This document shows, one piece after another, positions 41,946-47,840 of a stretch of DNA of 64,000 nucleotides. Made by a program: the position numbers and the translations under genes. Below the pieces are notes generated by a model that saw only the letters and a list, made by a program, of their open reading frames with translations, searched no databases and was not told where the DNA came from. Positions within the stretch are counted from its first letter, which is position 1. Each line of letters opens with the position of its first letter. The DNA is taken from the IMG/VR virus record IMGVR_UViG_3300032285_004054, positions 1 through 64,000 of that record. One strand, given 5' to 3'.

Positions 41946-43796
41946 TTATACGTCGACAGGGAATACTTTGCCCTTTTTCTCTAAAATGTCGTATCTACCA
42001 TCACCATTAACCATGAAAATTAGATTCTTTTGAGGGTTCTTAACTTCAGGTAATTGAGGATTATCTTCAACGTAACCGTCAGTGAAGTAAATGATATTAT
42101 CGACCTTTGTTATTTTTAAATGATCTAGTAATTTCTTAACACTTGACATTAAAGTGCCGCCTTCCTTAACAGGGAGCTGTTTAACCTTGGCCATAATAGC
42201 AGGTACAGATGATTTTTTACTATTTACAATCTCGTGATAATAAGCATTAACATTCCAAAGAATGAGCATTAATTCTACTTCCTTAAACTGTTTTAATAAC
42301 TGGAAAATATAACCAATATAGATGCTAAGCACTTCATCGTTAATAGAACCACTTGTATCGATAGCAATAATGGTTTTAACCTTCTCTTGCTCTTTTATAG
42401 TGCGTCCTTGATAAACAAGATTAGATGCTCCTCTACTACCTGTAGCAGCAGCCATTCTAATATTAGGCTTGGACATATCAGATCTTAGCTGATTAGAAGG
42501 TTTAATAACATCCTTTAAGATTTGTCTCCAATCTACTTTAACCTTTTCTTCACCGAACTTATTACGAAAACCGCCTTCAGCATTACCTCTGTTAGAGGCC
42601 TGTTGCTTAGCTCGATCAACCTTATTCCTCATATCGGCTTTCTTTTGAGCTTCAGTTGTCCCTGGTGCAGGCTGGTTCTTATTGTAGATAGGGTTATCTG
42701 AAGGCATATTAACTTGTCCCGGAGATCCCTTACCTGCTGTAATATGCTTATCGAGTTGTTCTTGTTTACCTGCTAGTGATTCTTTGAATGTAGTATCGTC
42801 TTTTAAGCCTTGGTCTTCTTTTTGTTGACCGCCTTGTCCCTGACCTTTACCTTGTTGTTGCTGTTGATCGTCTTGTCCTTGGCCCTGACCTTCTTGTTCG
42901 TTGCCTTGTTGACCTTGAGCTTGTTGATCACCTTGCCCAGGCTGTGGTTGCCCGCTTTGACCTTGACCAGGCTGTGGTTGCCCGCTTTGACCTTGACCTT
43001 GTTGAGAGTTGCCTTGTTGATTCTGATTCTGGTTACCTTTCTTCTTCTCTTGTTCGTTGTCGAGCTTCTCAAATACCTTGTAAAGCTCTTCAGCTGTCAT
43101 GTCGGTAATGTCTGTACCTGCTACCTCCATAGCATGTTCCATAGGAGGTAGTACCCAACGACCACCTTCCTGTAGCGGTAGACAGCCAATAGAAGGAAGT
43201 TTATAACCAGACTCAAGAATATCTCTATTCATGACGAAGTCAGTAGCAACGTTCCAGAGTGTATGATCTTTGCGACCTTTTCTAAAGAATGTATTATTAG
43301 CAATGTGAAGAGTCTCGTGTAATAGAACACCAATAACTTCTTCGTAAGAAAGCTGCTTTAAAGCAAAATTGGGATTAATATAGATATTCCCGTAATCATC
43401 TACACCCATTGTAGGTACATCGTATGTAACTACTGTTTTAAGATTCTGTAATAGAATACCATAGTAAGGAGCGCGCTTATAAAGTTCGTAACGTGCTCTT
43501 GTTAGAAGGTTATCGAGTCTTGTAAGCTCATCTGTAGAAAGTTCTTGATACTGATTCTCTTGAGAGTTAAGCGCGACATCGAGCTGTCTTTCAATTTCAT
43601 CAATCTGCTCATCAGACATCCCTTGTTTCTTTAATTCCTTTCTCTGCTTATCAGACATCTTATAAGGCTCACCAGGCTTTCTAGGGTTAGGATTTTCGTT
43701 AACCTCGGTTAATAGCCTACTTTGAGGTAATCTAGCTTCAAAAATCAATCTAGAATAGACACTCGAAAGCTGTTTGTCTTCTTTTCTATAGTACAT
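41946..43796 (-). CDS. metallopeptidase + VWA domain protein (DUF2201-type)
   Basis: T.GVD..G.IY.NP.F, HETLH, WN.A.D; Q/G linker; IDTSGSI, GGT, FTDG MIDAS. Confidence 0.9.
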   Translation of the reverse strand: MYYRKEDKQLSSVYSRLIFEARLPQSRLLTEVNENPNPRKPGEPYKMSDKQRKELKKQGMSDEQIDEIERQLDVALNSQENQYQELSTDELTRLDNLLTRARYELYKRAPYYGILLQNLKTVVTYDVPTMGVDDYGNIYINPNFALKQLSYEEVIGVLLHETLHIANNTFFRKGRKDHTLWNVATDFVMNRDILESGYKLPSIGCLPLQEGGRWVLPPMEHAMEVAGTDITDMTAEELYKVFEKLDNEQEKKKGNQNQNQQGNSQQGQGQSGQPQPGQGQSGQPQPGQGDQQAQGQQGNEQEGQGQGQDDQQQQQGKGQGQGGQQKEDQGLKDDTTFKESLAGKQEQLDKHITAGKGSPGQVNMPSDNPIYNKNQPAPGTTEAQKKADMRNKVDRAKQQASNRGNAEGGFRNKFGEEKVKVDWRQILKDVIKPSNQLRSDMSKPNIRMAAATGSRGASNLVYQGRTIKEQEKVKTIIAIDTSGSINDEVLSIYIGYIFQLLKQFKEVELMLILWNVNAYYHEIVNSKKSSVPAIMAKVKQLPVKEGGTLMSSVKKLLDHLKITKVDNIIYFTDGYVEDNPQLPEVKNPQKNLIFMVNGDGRYDILEKKGKVFPVDV

Positions 43797-43820
43797 GAAT
43801 ATATTATTTATTAAAAAAGC

Positions 43821-43895
43821 TGGAGCATCGGGTGAGAATCGAACTCACTATAAAGGGTTTTGCAGACCCTTGCCTGGCCAGTTAGCTTCCGATGC
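43821..43895 (-). tRNA. tRNA-Cys(GCA)
   Basis: Cloverleaf: GCATCGG/CCGATGC-U-CCA, anticodon arm AGGGT-CTGCAAA-ACCCT, TTCGA loop. Confidence 0.92.
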
Positions 43896-43896
43896 A

Positions 43897-44028
43897 TTAT
43901 TTTATAATTTTATGAAGAATTTTAGAAATAATCAATGCTAAAATTTTAACAGTATATACAAATAGCCCTAATGCAAGAAAAGGTAAGATCATTAGGCCGA
44001 AACCTACACCCTCATCAGCGGTGAGCAT
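43897..44028 (-). CDS. small membrane peptide (43 aa) between tRNAs
   Basis: ATAAATACTTAC-ATG; hydrophobic core. Confidence 0.55.
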   Translation of the reverse strand: MLTADEGVGFGLMILPFLALGLFVYTVKILALIISKILHKIIK

Positions 44029-44039
44029 GTAAGTATTTA

Positions 44040-44130
44040 TGGAGGAAGCGGAGGGATTCGAACCCTCGGAGGCGATAAAACCTCTGCAGTTTAGTAAACT
44101 GCTGCAATAGGCCAGCTCTGCCACACTTCC
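44040..44130 (-). tRNA. tRNA-Ser(ACT), long variable arm
   Basis: GGAAGTG/CGCTTCC-U-CCA; anticodon arm GCAGT-TTACTAA-ACTGC; variable stem GAGG/CCTC. Confidence 0.85.
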
Positions 44131-44137
44131 AAATACT

Positions 44138-44665
44138 TTATACTAAATCTTTAAAATAATGTCCTTGCTTATCCTTTTCAGATAATACAGGATATGGTAC
44201 ATCCCAGCTTATATTCAAATCCGGATCATTCCACATTAAAGTTTTTTCATATTCAGGATATCTAAAATCAGATACAAGATACTGAAACACTGCTTTTTCA
44301 GATTTTACATGAAAGCCATGAGCACAACCTTCAGGGACATAAATCAAAGTATCTCCTCTGAGTAACTGCGAGTCCCATTGACCAAATGTTGGAGAGTCTT
44401 TTCTTAGATCAACAAAAACATCTAATACAGTACCAGAACTAACCCAAACTAATTTTGCTTGAGGATGTTCAGATTGGTAATGTAGACCTCTTAAAACATT
44501 TTGTTTTGAAACACTACGATTCATCTGAACAAACTTTGTATCAATACCTAATACTGTACTAAAGTCTTGCAAATTCCAAGTTTCAGAAAATGAACCTCTA
44601 TCATCTTCATACACTTTTGGCTCAATAACCCAAGCCCCTTTTACTTTTGTTTCTTTGACTATCAT
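44138..44665 (-). CDS. rmlC: dTDP-4-dehydrorhamnose 3,5-epimerase
   Basis: DDRG.F.E, Q.N.S.S...VLRGLHYQ, QAKLV, DV.VDLR..SPTFGQW, G.AHGF. Confidence 0.95.
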   Translation of the reverse strand: MIVKETKVKGAWVIEPKVYEDDRGSFSETWNLQDFSTVLGIDTKFVQMNRSVSKQNVLRGLHYQSEHPQAKLVWVSSGTVLDVFVDLRKDSPTFGQWDSQLLRGDTLIYVPEGCAHGFHVKSEKAVFQYLVSDFRYPEYEKTLMWNDPDLNISWDVPYPVLSEKDKQGHYFKDLV

Positions 44666-45648
44666 TGCATCCAGGCCCTGTTTTTGAGTGTCCAGGCAAT
44701 TACATCTCTTAAAGAATCTTCAAAGTCTAATTCAGGTTTCCAACCAAGAGATTTTAGCTTTGAATCATCCAGAGCGTATTTCTTATCATAACCTGGTCGA
44801 ATTGCTGTCTCTTCTACGAGTTCAATCTTAGCAGGTATGTTCATAATGTGAGAGATCTTATCTACTAGATCAACGTTACTAATTTCATCATGACCTCCAA
44901 CATGATAACGATCAGGGAGCTCTTCAAAGTCTGCACTTGTATAAGGAGCTACCCATCTCTGCATTACAAAATTAATTGCCGAGCAAAGATTACGAACGTG
45001 AATATATTTTCTCGCACCAGACTTACCATTACTAGAATAGATAGGAATCGTCTTACCTTCGTAGATGTATTTGATTGTCTTCGGAATCATCTTCTCTACA
45101 TTTTGCATCTTACCAAACATATTTTGACAATTAATAATCGCTAAAGGTGTTCCATAGGTTCTCCAATAAGAGATAGCAATAGCTTCCTGACATGCCTTGG
45201 AAGCTGAATAAGGATTAGATGGGACAATCTTAGCCCATTCCTTATGAGGTACATCATAGTACTGACCATAGACTTCATCCGTAGAAAGATGAATAAACTT
45301 CTCTACATTCTTTCTCTTTGCGAAGTCTAATATATTAAGAATAAGATTTACATTGTTAAGAACAACTGAATCAGGATTTGAAATTGAACGATCAATAGCT
45401 GACTCACTTGCTATATTAACGATAATATCAACATCACCTATCTTAGTAGAAAGAACCGGTGAAATAGGTGTATTGAGATCGTGAGTGAAATGACTGAATC
45501 TTTCGTTCTTTGTAATTCTCTGAGAGTCGCCCATATGTCTGAGTGAGTCTAAACCAATTACTTCTACTGTCGGATCTTTTTCTAAAAGGTATTCTACAAA
45601 GTTTGCTCCAACAAAACCTGCACTACCTGTTACTAGTATTCGTTTCAT
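44662..45648 (-). CDS. rmlB: dTDP-glucose 4,6-dehydratase
   Basis: VTGSAGFVG, ASES.IDRSI, STDEVYG, P.NPYSASKA, RPG.D..YA.D. Confidence 0.9.
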   Translation of the reverse strand: MKRILVTGSAGFVGANFVEYLLEKDPTVEVIGLDSLRHMGDSQRITKNERFSHFTHDLNTPISPVLSTKIGDVDIIVNIASESAIDRSISNPDSVVLNNVNLILNILDFAKRKNVEKFIHLSTDEVYGQYYDVPHKEWAKIVPSNPYSASKACQEAIAISYWRTYGTPLAIINCQNMFGKMQNVEKMIPKTIKYIYEGKTIPIYSSNGKSGARKYIHVRNLCSAINFVMQRWVAPYTSADFEELPDRYHVGGHDEISNVDLVDKISHIMNIPAKIELVEETAIRPGYDKKYALDDSKLKSLGWKPELDFEDSLRDVIAWTLKNRAWMQ

Positions 45649-45651
45649 AAA

Positions 45652-46258
45652 ATCTAATTATATTGCACCAGGTGCTCAATCTAGGCGCTAAATTAAACTT
45701 TATTTAACCTCAATACTAATATTGTGTACCTCCGGTTTCACAACAGGTACCTTAACTCGTAGTAACCCGTCTGTGTATGTTGATGAGATGTTCTTAACGT
45801 CCGTATTGTCATTAAGCGTGAAGGACAATTGTCCCTTCCTACGGCTAATGCCTTTACGATGGAAGTGTATAGTCTCATCATGTTCGACCTCTTCCTTATT
45901 AACTGCAATCAAGAGTTTACCTTCCTTGACTGTTACGTTAATATTTTCCTTTCCTACGCCAGCCAATGCTACTTCGATGTAGTAGGTGACCGGATTACCG
46001 TCTGGATCGGTTTCTGATACGATGTTATAAGGATAGACTGCATTTGGAATATCAAATGCTTTATCGAAGTCCTTAAAGACATCACTTAGCCAGCTTTCAT
46101 TAAACAGAGCTGGGAGGTGGCTGTACCCCGCGCCCTGGGCAGGAACGAGCCTGCCGACTGTGTATGGTGTTATTGTTGTTGTCATATTTTTTCTCCTTTA
46201 TTAAGCGAGTTAATATGTTTGCTTTAGGTCTGATTGAGCACCTGAGCAAATATAATTA
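45652..46258. repeat. imperfect inverted repeat pair flanking hsp20
   Basis: Perfect core CAGGTGCTCAATC (45669-45681) / GATTGAGCACCTG (46232-46244), extending imperfectly to ~30 bp. Confidence 0.8.
45700..46185 (-). CDS. small heat shock protein Hsp20
   Basis: YPYNI, Y.IE.ALAG..K..I.V....L.I, GIS.R....F.L, DGLL.V.VP; AAGGAG SD. Confidence 0.93.
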   Translation of the reverse strand: MTTTITPYTVGRLVPAQGAGYSHLPALFNESWLSDVFKDFDKAFDIPNAVYPYNIVSETDPDGNPVTYYIEVALAGVGKENINVTVKEGKLLIAVNKEEVEHDETIHFHRKGISRRKGQLSFTLNDNTDVKNISSTYTDGLLRVKVPVVKPEVHNISIEVK

Positions 46259-46289: not shown

Positions 46290-46373
46290 TGGAGCCTGAG
46301 GTGAGATTCGAACTCACGGAGCTTGCGCGTCGGTTTACAAAACCGATCCTATTGGCCACTAAGGGACTCAGGC
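46290..46373 (-). tRNA. tRNA-Thr(TGT) with extended variable arm
   Basis: GCCTGAG/CTCAGGC-U-CCA; TCGGT-TTTGTAA-ACCGA; 12-nt variable region; TTGACT-17-TAATAT promoter upstream. Confidence 0.88.
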
Positions 46374-46417: not shown

Positions 46418-46780
46418 TTATTTTTCAAAATGTTCTTCTTTTAATTTAGCATTCCAAATCTTAGCATCCTCTACAGAGTTTGGATTTATATTTTTATAAT
46501 CACCTAAATGCCCTACAAGTAAATGGCAGATAATTCCGTAACTAGCACATTCACATAATGTAATAAGATTATCAGGGTCTAATTCTAAATCAGGATGTAA
46601 GTGAAATGGTTTGATATGATGTACGTTTAATTGTTTTGTACCTTCACATATAGCACATTTTGGGTTATTCTTAAGATGTTCTTTACGTGTAGCGGTCCAT
46701 TTAGGAGAACGCTTAGGTCCTCCTGCAGGTATTTTTCCTTTAGCTACATCTAGTGTATGATTTAAACGTGTCGAAGCCAT
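46418..46780 (-). CDS. HNH endonuclease
   Basis: RS.KW...R..HL..NP.CAIC, VHHI.P, NLITLC, CH. Confidence 0.9.
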   Translation of the reverse strand: MASTRLNHTLDVAKGKIPAGGPKRSPKWTATRKEHLKNNPKCAICEGTKQLNVHHIKPFHLHPDLELDPDNLITLCECASYGIICHLLVGHLGDYKNINPNSVEDAKIWNAKLKEEHFEK

Positions 46781-46810
46781 GTAAGTACTTATGTTCAAAG
46801 TACTTTAAAT

Positions 46811-47255
46811 TGGTGGAGGCGAGGGGAGTCGAACCCCTGTGTTTATAATGTTAAGTCTGTACTTCTACACGCTTAGGTAATTTTGACATTTGGTTGAAAT
46901 AGGTTGTCGTGGCTTACCGGCCTTATGTTTGTTTCCTTACCTACTGAGTTGTACTTAGGACTCAGTTCCAGACACCGTTTATTTTATTGGCTCAGATGAC
47001 CCACCAAACCTATTGTTTAAGCTCCTAAGATTTTTAATAGGATCCAATCTTAGTTTTTAGGCTGCGAGGAGGTATTCGTCCTCAACACCGGCGAGGATCT
47101 CGTCGGCGTGATTAATACAATACTCAGCTTCAGCTAAGAGCGCATCAGTGTTGTCTTCTGCGTTTAGTTTTTTTAATCTGATTTTATAGTGGCCATCAGA
47201 TCAACCACTGCGTGCAATACAAAGTTCGATTATAAGTCGAATCCAGTACGCCCCC
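46811..47255 (-). ncRNA. ssrA: tmRNA (445 nt)
   Basis: 5' GGGGGCGTACTGGATTCGAC; 3' GGGGTTCGACTCCCCTCGCCTCCACCA with G3-U70; internal tag ORF 47161-47057 ending YLLAA*. Confidence 0.93.
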
Positions 47256-47297
47256 ATAATTTCAAAGAACTATGTATAGTTTATATTCTAACTATAT

Positions 47298-47840
47298 TTA
47301 TTCAACTGAATAGTTAATGTTCATTATAACTCTTCTAGGCACTGTTGTAGGTGTAGTACCTGCATGATACTGTTGACCGTCAAAGCATAACAGTCTATTC
47401 CTTTTAGGTAGTACTTCTGCCTGTACAGTGAAATCTGTAGGCGTTATAGCACTTTCTCTTTCATTGTAGATTATAGTTGGACCGTCAGAATCATTTATGT
47501 ATAAAAGAGCAGTACGATGGTTACCGTCCCTATCAACATGAGCTCCTGCATTGTATGGTTTATCTGTTGCAGTGTTTAAAATCATACGCACCCTAAAAAC
47601 ATCTTTAACGTTTTCTCCAGCAAGCTGTAAAATCCTATAAACTGTTCTAGCAAATATACCTTGTTCACCTTCTACCCAGGTAAGACCTCCGGTTATAATA
47701 TGAAACCAGCTATACAGAAACAAATTGTCTTCTTCTGAGCCGTTACCCTTTCTTCCGAAGTACCAAGGAAACTTACCCATTACTTTGTGTTCAAGTATTG
47801 CGAATTCCTCTTCGGGTAAAATATTATCAATTATTTTCAT
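47298..47840 (-). CDS. 2OG-Fe(II) oxygenase
   Basis: IIDN.L, H.D, LLYIN.SDG.T, PK.NR...FDG..YH, R...N.N. Confidence 0.88.
   Translation of the reverse strand: MKIIDNILPEEEFAILEHKVMGKFPWYFGRKGNGSEEDNLFLYSWFHIITGGLTWVEGEQGIFARTVYRILQLAGENVKDVFRVRMILNTATDKPYNAGAHVDRDGNHRTALLYINDSDGPTIIYNERESAITPTDFTVQAEVLPKRNRLLCFDGQQYHAGTTPTTVPRRVIMNINYSVE

What the first reader, a model, noticed from the sequence alone, without database searches (positions are those of the whole stretch)
46811..47255. Phage tmRNA with an exceptionally long 34-residue tag
The resume codon GCA after an A-rich tract gives AEDNTDALLAEAEYCINHADEILAGVEDEYLLAA*. That is about three times the usual ~10 aa, with a normal-looking start (AEDN) and ClpX-type end (LAA) around an acidic, helical-looking insert. 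It may redirect rescued proteins to another adaptor or protease, alter degradation, or sustain ribosome rescue when host tmRNA is cleaved. It is preceded by TAAATA.
Basis: partly seen in the sequence, partly recalled or inferred. Interest (0 to 1): 0.66.

Follow-up and report, generated by a model that had tools for sequence, protein, structure and literature searches.

The report
Phage tmRNA with conserved long tag
A 218-kb uncultured phage carries its own ribosome-rescue RNA (tmRNA) whose built-in degradation tag is about three times the usual length, and the same long, acidic tag is conserved across dozens of related phages but was not found in any bacterial genome searched.

Summary
A complete one-piece tmRNA lies on the minus strand at 47255..46811 (Rfam RF00023, 111.7 bits, E 8e-43). 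From the GCA that aligns with the canonical resume codon, it encodes 34 residues and a TAA stop.

A single open frame of that length has about a 12% chance. The real evidence is comparative:
- 16 distinct full-length tmRNAs and 32 distinct tags (31-35 residues) come from related uncultured phages in at least 23 metagenome samples.
- They keep the frame, change length only by whole codons, and vary mostly at third positions (pN/pS 0.23).
- A at -4 before the GCA is invariant. That base is not kept at ARAGORN's alternative downstream start.
- Acceptor stem (G3:U70 in all 16), T arm and pseudoknot 1 covary.

The phage has no SmpB, ClpP, Lon, SspB or ClpS, so it must use host factors. A motif scan of 185,579 bacterial and archaeal species found no tmRNA with this tag.

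The length sits at the top of the published range (8-35), not beyond it. 95 sampled bacterial tags have median 10 and maximum 24. Long tags also occur in Bxz1, Cellulophaga phages and one huge phage. ARAGORN misses or truncates most of them.

The role of the acidic helical insert is untested and the host is unknown.

The parts
46811..47255 (-). one-piece tmRNA (ssrA) gene, 445 nt, 3' CCA encoded
   Evidence: RF00023 111.7 bits, E 7.9e-43, model 1-374. ARAGORN at -ps90 gives the same ends.
47249..47255 (-). 5' strand of the acceptor stem (tmRNA nt 1-7), with G3 of the G3:U70 pair
   Evidence: Pairs with 46821..46815. G3:U70 is present in 16 of 16 clade members, with compensatory changes at pairs 4-6.
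47176..47209 (-). pseudoknot 1 (tmRNA nt 47-80): stem a 47-51/64-68, stem b 55-61/74-80
   Evidence: Stem a is paired in 15-16 of 16 sequences with 2-3 pair types at four of its five positions (one pair never varies). Stem b is paired in 10-16 of 16 with up to 3 pair types.
47165..47166 (-). U(-5) A(-4) frame-setting bases before the resume codon
   Evidence: A at -4 in 16 of 16 and U at -5 in 15 of 16. The E. coli equivalent A86 is the main frame determinant (PMC2481249).
47060..47161 (-). tag reading frame, 34 codons from the resume codon GCA (47161..47159)
   Evidence: Translation. pN/pS is 0.23. Variable columns by codon position are 16/12/28 of 35 (chi-square p 3.5e-4). All indels are whole codons.
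47057..47059 (-). TAA stop of the tag frame
   Evidence: The stop is in the same place in all relatives: TAA in 15 and TGA in 1.
46822..46838 (-). T arm of the tRNA-like domain (nt 418-434)
   Evidence: Five pairs, all paired in 16 of 16, with 2-4 pair types at four positions.
46811..46821 (-). 3' strand of the acceptor stem plus ACCA
47261..47270 (-). conserved leader motif GTTCTTTGAA, 5 nt before the mature 5' end; role unknown
   Evidence: [GT][AT]TCTTTGA lies 6-15 nt before G1 in 15 of 16 clade members. It is not a genome-wide signal: 32 copies against 24 expected.
47295..47302 (-). AATAAATA, a 7-of-8 match to the T4-type late promoter TATAAATA; possible promoter of the tmRNA precursor (weak)
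   Evidence: 15 of the 25 exact TATAAATA copies in this genome sit 13-21 nt before an ORF start. Two relatives have exact TATAAATA upstream of their tmRNA. The sigma-70 scan was uninformative.

Best explanation
This is a functional one-piece tmRNA carried by a large (218,400 bp), distantly T4-like, uncultured myovirus.

Shown:
- It has every sequence and structure feature of a tmRNA.
- It belongs to a clade of phage tmRNAs under selection both as RNA and as a coding frame.
- The frame starts at the GCA at 47161 and encodes 34 residues: a canonical-looking start (AEDN), an acidic, predicted-helical middle, and a canonical nonpolar end (LLAA).
- With the alanine carried by the charged tmRNA, rescued chains would gain 35 residues.
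- The phage encodes no SmpB and no Clp or Lon protease or adaptor.

Inferred:
- The RNA is charged by host AlaRS and delivered by host SmpB and EF-Tu to ribosomes stalled on broken mRNAs. This adds rescue capacity during infection, when mRNA is being destroyed and host gene expression declines.
- The C-terminal LAA-type end marks the products for the host's ClpXP-type proteases.
- The strongly conserved helical insert is a second recognition or spacing element that changes how, or how fast, tagged chains are handled. It might bind an adaptor, or keep truncated chains soluble. Its partner is unknown.
For: RNA identity:
- Full-model Rfam match.
- G3:U70 invariant, and acceptor, T arm and PK1 covary across 16 distinct sequences.
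- All 16 tested relatives score 75-153 bits.

Frame:
- The GCA aligns to the consensus resume codon.
- A at -4 is invariant, matching the E. coli rule (PMC2481249).
- pN/pS is 0.23, with third positions variable in 28 of 35 codons against 12 of 35 second positions.
- The 32 distinct tags are 31-35 residues long and differ only by whole-codon indels.
- The other two frames carry stops.
- There is no start codon, so only trans-translation can read the frame.

Phage origin:
- The gene lies in a 218-kb virus record rated complete, among phage genes and tRNAs.
- Homologues sit in 26 IMG/VR contigs of up to 211 kb and about 42 further metagenome contigs.

Degron:
- The ends are YLLAA, MLLAA, xALAA and similar in all 32 tags.
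- AlphaFold2 predicts helices at 5-17, 19-23 and 28-31 and a free C-terminus, with pLDDT 84.5.

Dependence on the host: no SmpB, ClpP, SspB, Lon_C or ClpS in the phage.
Against: - No expression data: the only run holding the sequence is the DNA metagenome it probably came from.
- The host is unknown, so compatibility with its SmpB, AlaRS and proteases is assumed.
- Nothing shows that the tag leads to degradation or that the insert binds anything. There was no match to Pfam or to solved structures.
- The invariance of LAEAEY in the larger set is partly built in, because the search pattern encoded it. However, the three relatives found through the capsid protein alone share it, while a fourth (L108) has a diverged, basic tag of the same length.
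- AlphaFold2 confidence on a 34-residue peptide is weak evidence.
Confidence: 0.75

Rival explanations
1. The true resume codon is the downstream GAA that ARAGORN picks (tmRNA nt 125), so the tag has 24 residues and the first ten codons are untranslated leader.
For: ARAGORN at relaxed thresholds reports this reading for the window and two relatives. In the window that GAA is preceded by UAGCU, which resembles E. coli's UAGUC.
Against: The -4 base at that site is A in only 6 of 15 relatives and G in 9, because it is the wobble base of a Leu codon (TTA/TTG). Codons 3, 4 and 9 of the upstream part change only synonymously, and one lineage has lost exactly one codon there. The site lies 44 nt after PK1, whereas the GCA sits at the canonical distance and aligns to the model's resume codon. 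Even on this reading the tag would be 24 residues, still long.
Confidence: 0.05
2. The conservation of the 'tag' region reflects RNA structure or protein binding, not translation. On this view the RNA works only in ribosome release, or as a decoy that titrates SmpB, like the TLD-only molecule of mycobacteriophage DS6A.
For: A TLD-only phage molecule exists and similar molecules inhibit tmRNA (PMC4131195). No expression or tagging data exist here.
Against: Variation is concentrated at third codon positions (chi-square p 3.5e-4). All length changes are multiples of three. The frame is open in all sequences while the other frames hold 0-5 stops each (at least 3 in one of them). Residue classes are kept where bases change. 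The full mRNA-like domain and the frame-setting A are retained.
Confidence: 0.07
3. The gene is simply the host's ssrA, picked up recently or mis-assembled into the contig, and the host phylum has the same long tag, so nothing is phage-specific.
For: Phages do acquire host ssrA (PMC9004378). The host here is unknown, so its tag could not be read.
Against: A peptide-level pattern for the conserved core found 31 places in one genome each of 185,579 bacterial and archaeal species. All 31 lie inside long protein genes and none is a tmRNA. The gene recurs in phage contigs from at least 23 samples, next to phage genes and tRNA arrays, and has diverged with them. A capsid-related phage (L108) has a strongly diverged tag of the same length, which argues for long residence in the phage lineage. 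Limitation: a host tag that is long but lacks the motif would have been missed.
Confidence: 0.08
4. The long tag is not a degradation signal. The helical acidic peptide instead gives tagged chains another fate (solubilisation, sequestration, or recognition by a phage protein), and the LAA end is a relic.
For: The most conserved part is the middle (T5, L9-Y14, N17; I15, F16, N18, A19 and F22 nearly invariant), not the end. Similar long helical inserts occur in unrelated phage tmRNAs.
Against: The last two residues are AA in all 32 tags and the last five stay within the canonical ssrA pattern. That is hard to explain without selection for the protease signal. No phage-encoded protease or adaptor family was found.
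Confidence: 0.15

Closest known systems
Bacterial one-piece tmRNA (SsrA, Rfam RF00023), e.g. E. coli with tag ANDENYALAA
   Same: tRNA-like domain with G3:U70, PK1, an A-rich tract with U-A at -5/-4, GCA resume codon, a frame without a start codon, TAA stop, N-terminal A-x-D-N and C-terminal LAA.
   Different: The tag has 34 rather than about 10 codons, and the gene is 445 nt rather than about 350-370. 95 sampled bacterial tmRNAs have ARAGORN tags with median 10 and maximum 24. It is carried by a phage that has no SmpB. ARAGORN's default does not detect it.
Mycobacteriophage Bxz1 (cluster C) tmRNA
   Same: A phage-borne one-piece tmRNA with a long, acidic tag free of basic residues: 25 residues at L182:1596-1670. 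It has an A-x-D-T-D start and an AE-x-E-aromatic-F helix-like middle. It is listed among known phage tmRNAs (PMC4131195).
   Different: There is no detectable nucleotide similarity. The tag is shorter and ends in ALV. The host is an actinobacterium. ARAGORN recognises it.
Cellulophaga phage tmRNAs (phi14:2, Calle_1) and huge phage LR756508
   Same: From the codon that Rfam aligns to the resume position, the frames run 38 codons (L267:1584-1697), 30 codons (L271:789-878) and 36 codons (L265:1597-1704). ARAGORN reports only 11, 22 and 8 residues. The two Cellulophaga tags are alike from the first codon.
   Different: Their resume codon is GGN (Gly). The tags are less acidic and are not related in sequence to the window's tag. 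For LR756508 only one sequence is available, so that frame is not confirmed by comparison.
Two-piece tmRNAs of marine myophages (Melnitz, pelagimyophages, cyanophages)
   Same: ssrA carried by distantly T4-like aquatic myoviruses. The proposed roles are keeping translation going or recycling host proteins (PMC9004378).
   Different: Those are circularly permuted two-piece tmRNAs related to host lineages, whereas this one is one-piece. No riboswitch or other extra RNA family reached Rfam's gathering scores in the window.

Membership tests
tmRNA (Rfam RF00023) | Covariance-model score above the curated gathering score over the full model | tested here: met
   111.7 bits against 47, model positions 1-374, E 7.9e-43.
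tmRNA (Rfam RF00023) | tRNA-like domain: 7-bp acceptor stem with the G3:U70 alanine identity pair, T arm, 3' CCA | tested here: met
   G3:U70 in 16 of 16 relatives. The acceptor and T arm covary. CCA is encoded in the window.
tmRNA (Rfam RF00023) | Pseudoknot 1 upstream of the resume codon | tested here: met
   Both stems are kept by compensatory changes.
tmRNA (Rfam RF00023) | Frame-setting upstream sequence (U-5, A-4) and a resume codon without a start codon | tested here: met
   UAAAC before the GCA. A at -4 is invariant. The rule comes from PMC2481249.
tmRNA (Rfam RF00023) | Short frame ending in a stop and encoding a tag with a nonpolar C-terminus | tested here: met
   34 codons plus TAA, ending LLAA. 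The frame is under purifying selection.
tmRNA (Rfam RF00023) | Works with SmpB, AlaRS and EF-Tu in trans-translation | not testable with these tools
   No SmpB in the phage. The host is unknown and no RNA or proteomic data exist.
ssrA-type ClpXP degron | Free C-terminal Leu/Ala-Ala-Ala-type tail recognised by ClpX | tested here: inconclusive
   The sequence pattern is met in all 32 tags and the tail is not helical in the model. Binding and degradation were not tested.
SspB-assisted ssrA tag | N-terminal AANDxxY-type adaptor site and an SspB adaptor | tested here: inconclusive
   The start resembles the site only loosely. No SspB is present in the phage. The host's adaptors are unknown.

The most novel reading that the evidence does not exclude
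The conserved acidic helical insert is a separate recognition module. Through it the phage redirects the products of ribosome rescue to a partner other than the host's default route. Extended tags are then a recurrent, possibly convergent, trait of phage-borne tmRNAs that standard annotation has hidden. Four independent lineages were seen here: this clade, Bxz1-like phages, Cellulophaga phages and LR756508.
Probability: 0.25. Interest if true: 0.7.

Novelty: new variant of a known kind. Interest (0 to 1): 0.5.

Why it matters
Phage-borne tmRNAs are known but none has a tested function, and in the papers found here their tags are listed at most, not compared. This work identifies a widespread clade of phage tmRNAs, seen in at least 23 metagenome samples. 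Its tag is three times the usual length, conserved as a peptide, and absent from the bacterial genomes searched. That argues the phage needs a particular tag, not just extra rescue capacity.

There is also a practical point. ARAGORN, used by most phage annotation pipelines, missed 15 of 16 members of this clade and shortened the tag in the one it found. It also shortened long tags in three other phage tmRNAs. Published counts of phage tmRNAs and their tags are therefore likely biased.

The tag is a ready-made reagent for asking what a phage gains by changing the fate of aborted proteins.

Tried and rejected
- blastn of the tmRNA against 50,697 GenBank phage records: no match.
- An exact pattern from the 5' end in IMG/VR found only a near-identical contig from the same sample.
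- Sigma-70 promoter and terminator scan around the gene: no more sites than in shuffles.
- The leader motif as a genome-wide regulatory signal: rejected, 32 copies against 24 expected, in random contexts.
- Pfam scan of the tag and a profile search of PDB sequences: nothing (best E 2).
- Sequencing-run search: only the probable source metagenome, with no RNA run.
The capsid, polymerase and sheath proteins are only 30-40% identical to any cultured phage, with T4-like cyanophages and a pelagiphage as best hits. No host is proposed.
- One unpublished genome (G101, locus L342) turned up in the bacterial control sample.

Full report
**What is there**

Rfam's tmRNA model (RF00023) matches window 46811-47255 on the minus strand over its whole length, at 111.7 bits against a gathering score of 47 and E 7.9e-43. 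The 445-nt RNA has these parts:
- a 7-bp acceptor stem with G3:U70;
- a canonical T arm and an encoded CCA;
- pseudoknot 1 at nt 47-80;
- an A-rich tract ending UAAAC;
- GCA at nt 95 (window 47161..47159);
- 34 sense codons and then TAA (47059..47057).

ARAGORN at default settings does not report the gene. With a relaxed threshold it finds the same ends but starts the tag ten codons later, in the same frame.

**Where it sits**

The window is the first 64 kb of an IMG/VR virus record of 218,400 bp, 36% G+C, rated complete. The record encodes 14 tRNAs, a gp23-like major head protein, a tail sheath, a T4-type DNA polymerase, a DnaB-like helicase and a ribonucleotide reductase. No protein tested is more than about 40% identical to any cultured phage. 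The best hits are T4-like cyanophages and a pelagiphage. It is therefore an uncultured, distantly T4-like myovirus of unknown host.

The tmRNA lies between a 2OG-Fe(II)-oxygenase-like gene and an HNH endonuclease gene. Three tRNA genes lie nearby on the same strand.

**Is the long frame real?**

On its own it is not significant: 12% of shuffles of the tmRNA keep 34 codons open at that position. The case rests on relatives.

How the relatives were found:
- Among 35 contigs that share the capsid protein at 65-82% identity, four carry a tmRNA.
- A 20-nt degenerate pattern from the tag found 26 tmRNA-type loci in IMG/VR and about 42 in JGI/ENA metagenome contigs.
- All 16 loci tested with Rfam hold a full-length tmRNA at 75-153 bits.

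These give 16 distinct tmRNA sequences (alignment A1) and 32 distinct tags (alignment A2).

What the tags show:
- They are 31-35 residues long and differ in length only by whole codons.
- The frame is open in every sequence, while the other two frames carry stops.
- Nei-Gojobori counts give pS 0.49 and pN 0.11, a ratio of 0.23.
- Variable columns number 16, 12 and 28 of 35 at codon positions 1, 2 and 3 (chi-square p 3.5e-4).
- The first ten codons, the part in dispute with ARAGORN, behave as coding. Asp3, Asn4 and Leu9 change only synonymously, and one lineage has lost exactly one codon.

The frame-setting base gives an independent test. In E. coli A86, four bases before the resume codon, is the main determinant (PMC2481249).
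- Before the GCA, the base at -4 is A in 16 of 16, and the base at -5 is U in 15 of 16.
- At ARAGORN's alternative site, the base at -4 is the wobble base of a Leu codon, and it is G in 9 of 15.

The RNA itself is under selection. G3:U70 is invariant, and the acceptor stem, T arm and both stems of PK1 are kept by compensatory changes.

One caveat applies. The pattern used to enlarge the set encodes L-A-E-A-E-Y, so the invariance of those six residues is partly built in. The three relatives found through the capsid protein alone share the motif. A fourth (L108) has a strongly diverged, lysine-rich tag of 35 residues. Length has thus been kept over a longer time than sequence.

**How unusual is the length?**

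- A review gives 8-35 residues as the range of tags across species (PMC8012679). Thirty-four encoded residues is at the top of that range, not beyond it.
- In four samples of about 30 bacterial genomes each, 95 tmRNAs had ARAGORN tags with median 10 and maximum 24. Ninety of them were 13 or fewer. One unpublished genome was left out.
- A peptide-level pattern for the conserved core found 31 places in one genome each of 185,579 bacterial and archaeal species. All lie inside long protein genes such as arginyl-tRNA synthetase, and none is a tmRNA.

As far as this search reaches, the tag family is phage-only. A host tag that is long but lacks the motif would have been missed.

**Other phage tmRNAs**

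Phage tmRNAs are known:
- mycobacteriophages of the Bxz1 type and Bacillus phage G (PMC4131195);
- huge phages (PMC7162821);
- 402 of 18,146 phage genomes by ARAGORN (PMC9004378).

I re-read ten of them. Five have ordinary tags of 9-16 residues: EFDG1, phiL47, phage G, LR756511 and LR756500. The others are long:
- Bxz1 has a 25-residue acidic tag.
- Cellulophaga phage phi14:2 reads 38 codons from the codon that Rfam aligns to the resume position, and Calle_1 reads 30. ARAGORN reports 11 and 22. These two tags are alike from the first codon.
- Huge phage LR756508 reads 36 codons where ARAGORN reports 8 in another frame. That frame rests on a single sequence.

ARAGORN's default found only one of the 16 members of the window's clade, and shortened its tag. 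Long tags therefore recur in phage tmRNAs and are under-reported. I found no paper in the library that discusses this.

**How it most likely works**

The phage has no SmpB, ClpP, Lon, SspB or ClpS, so it depends on host factors.

I infer the usual path. Host AlaRS charges the RNA. Host SmpB and EF-Tu deliver it to ribosomes stalled on broken mRNAs. Translation resumes at the GCA and ends at the TAA.

All 32 tags end in AA, and their last five residues stay within the canonical ssrA pattern: YLLAA in 14, MLLAA in 10, and the rest xALAA-like. That points to ClpXP-type recognition.

The middle of the tag is the best conserved part:
- It carries about nine acidic residues and at most one basic residue.
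- AlphaFold2 predicts three helical stretches with a free C-terminal tail, at pLDDT 84.5. This is weak evidence for a peptide.
- It matches no Pfam family and no solved structure.

My best guess is a second recognition or spacing element that alters delivery to the protease, or that keeps aborted chains soluble. This is inference only.

**Transcription**

This phage appears to use T4-type late promoters. TATAAATA is depleted overall, but 15 of its 25 copies lie 13-21 nt before an ORF start. That makes a weak candidate promoter.

A separate motif, [GT][AT]TCTTTGA, lies 6-15 nt before the mature 5' end in 15 of 16 relatives. It is not a general signal in the genome, and I cannot explain it.

**Verdict**

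This is a new, widespread variant of a known kind: a phage tmRNA clade with a conserved 31-35-residue acidic tag. The tag's function, its expression and the host remain open.

Noticed in passing
window 47261-47270 (minus strand), and upstream of the tmRNA in L105, L108, L122, L125, L127, L128, L130, L132, L133, L135, L139, L140, L144, L145: A conserved motif [GT][AT]TCTTTGA lies 6-15 nt before the mature 5' end of the tmRNA in 15 of 16 clade members. It is not enriched elsewhere in the genome. It may be a leader, processing or transcription element specific to this gene.
   Followed up: partly
G000 genome-wide, e.g. window 41950, 56622 (minus) and 62121 (plus): TATAAATA, the T4-type late promoter, is depleted overall (25 copies against 46 expected). 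Yet 15 of the 25 copies lie 13-21 nt before the start codon of an ORF, so the phage probably uses T4-like late transcription.
   Followed up: partly
window 46290-46373, 44040-44130, 43821-43895 (all minus strand): There are odd tRNA genes next to the tmRNA. One is an 84-nt tRNA with anticodon UGU (Thr) and an 11-nt extra region. Another is a 91-nt type II tRNA with anticodon ACU (unmodified A34, reading Ser AGU). All three have U as discriminator and an encoded CCA. A 95-nt tRNA with anticodon UAU lies at genome position 190620-190714.
   Followed up: no
L267:1584-1697 (Cellulophaga phage phi14:2), L271:789-878 (Calle_1), L265:1597-1704 (huge phage LR756508): From the Rfam-aligned resume codon these phage tmRNAs read 38, 30 and 36 codons. 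ARAGORN reports 11, 22 and 8 residues. Published tags for such phages are probably too short.
   Followed up: partly
L145, L125, L139, L128, L144 (3' ends of their tmRNAs; alignment A1 columns ~545-565): Five clade members replace the canonical T loop (GGGGTTCGACTCCCC type) with a CGGC/GCCG stem and an 8-nt loop TATCGTAG that lacks the usual TTC. Several members also lack an encoded CCA.
   Followed up: no
L125:259-795 (minus strand): This relative's tag ends with TGA instead of TAA. It also carries an insertion of about 83 nt right after the stop codon, giving a 537-nt tmRNA.
   Followed up: no
L108:1501-1966 (IMGVR_UViG_3300025413_001393, 125 kb): A capsid-related phage has a tmRNA whose tag is the same length (35 residues) but lysine-rich in its first half rather than acidic. 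Length seems to be conserved longer than charge.
   Followed up: partly
window 46418-46798 (minus strand): An HNH endonuclease gene follows the tmRNA directly. The same gene start follows the tmRNA in L128, which suggests a mobile endonuclease linked to the tRNA/tmRNA region.
   Followed up: no
window 41946-46185 (minus strand): A run of auxiliary genes lies here: a DUF2201/VWA metallopeptidase-like protein, a dTDP-4-dehydrorhamnose 3,5-epimerase, an NAD-dependent sugar epimerase/dehydratase and an Hsp20.
   Followed up: no
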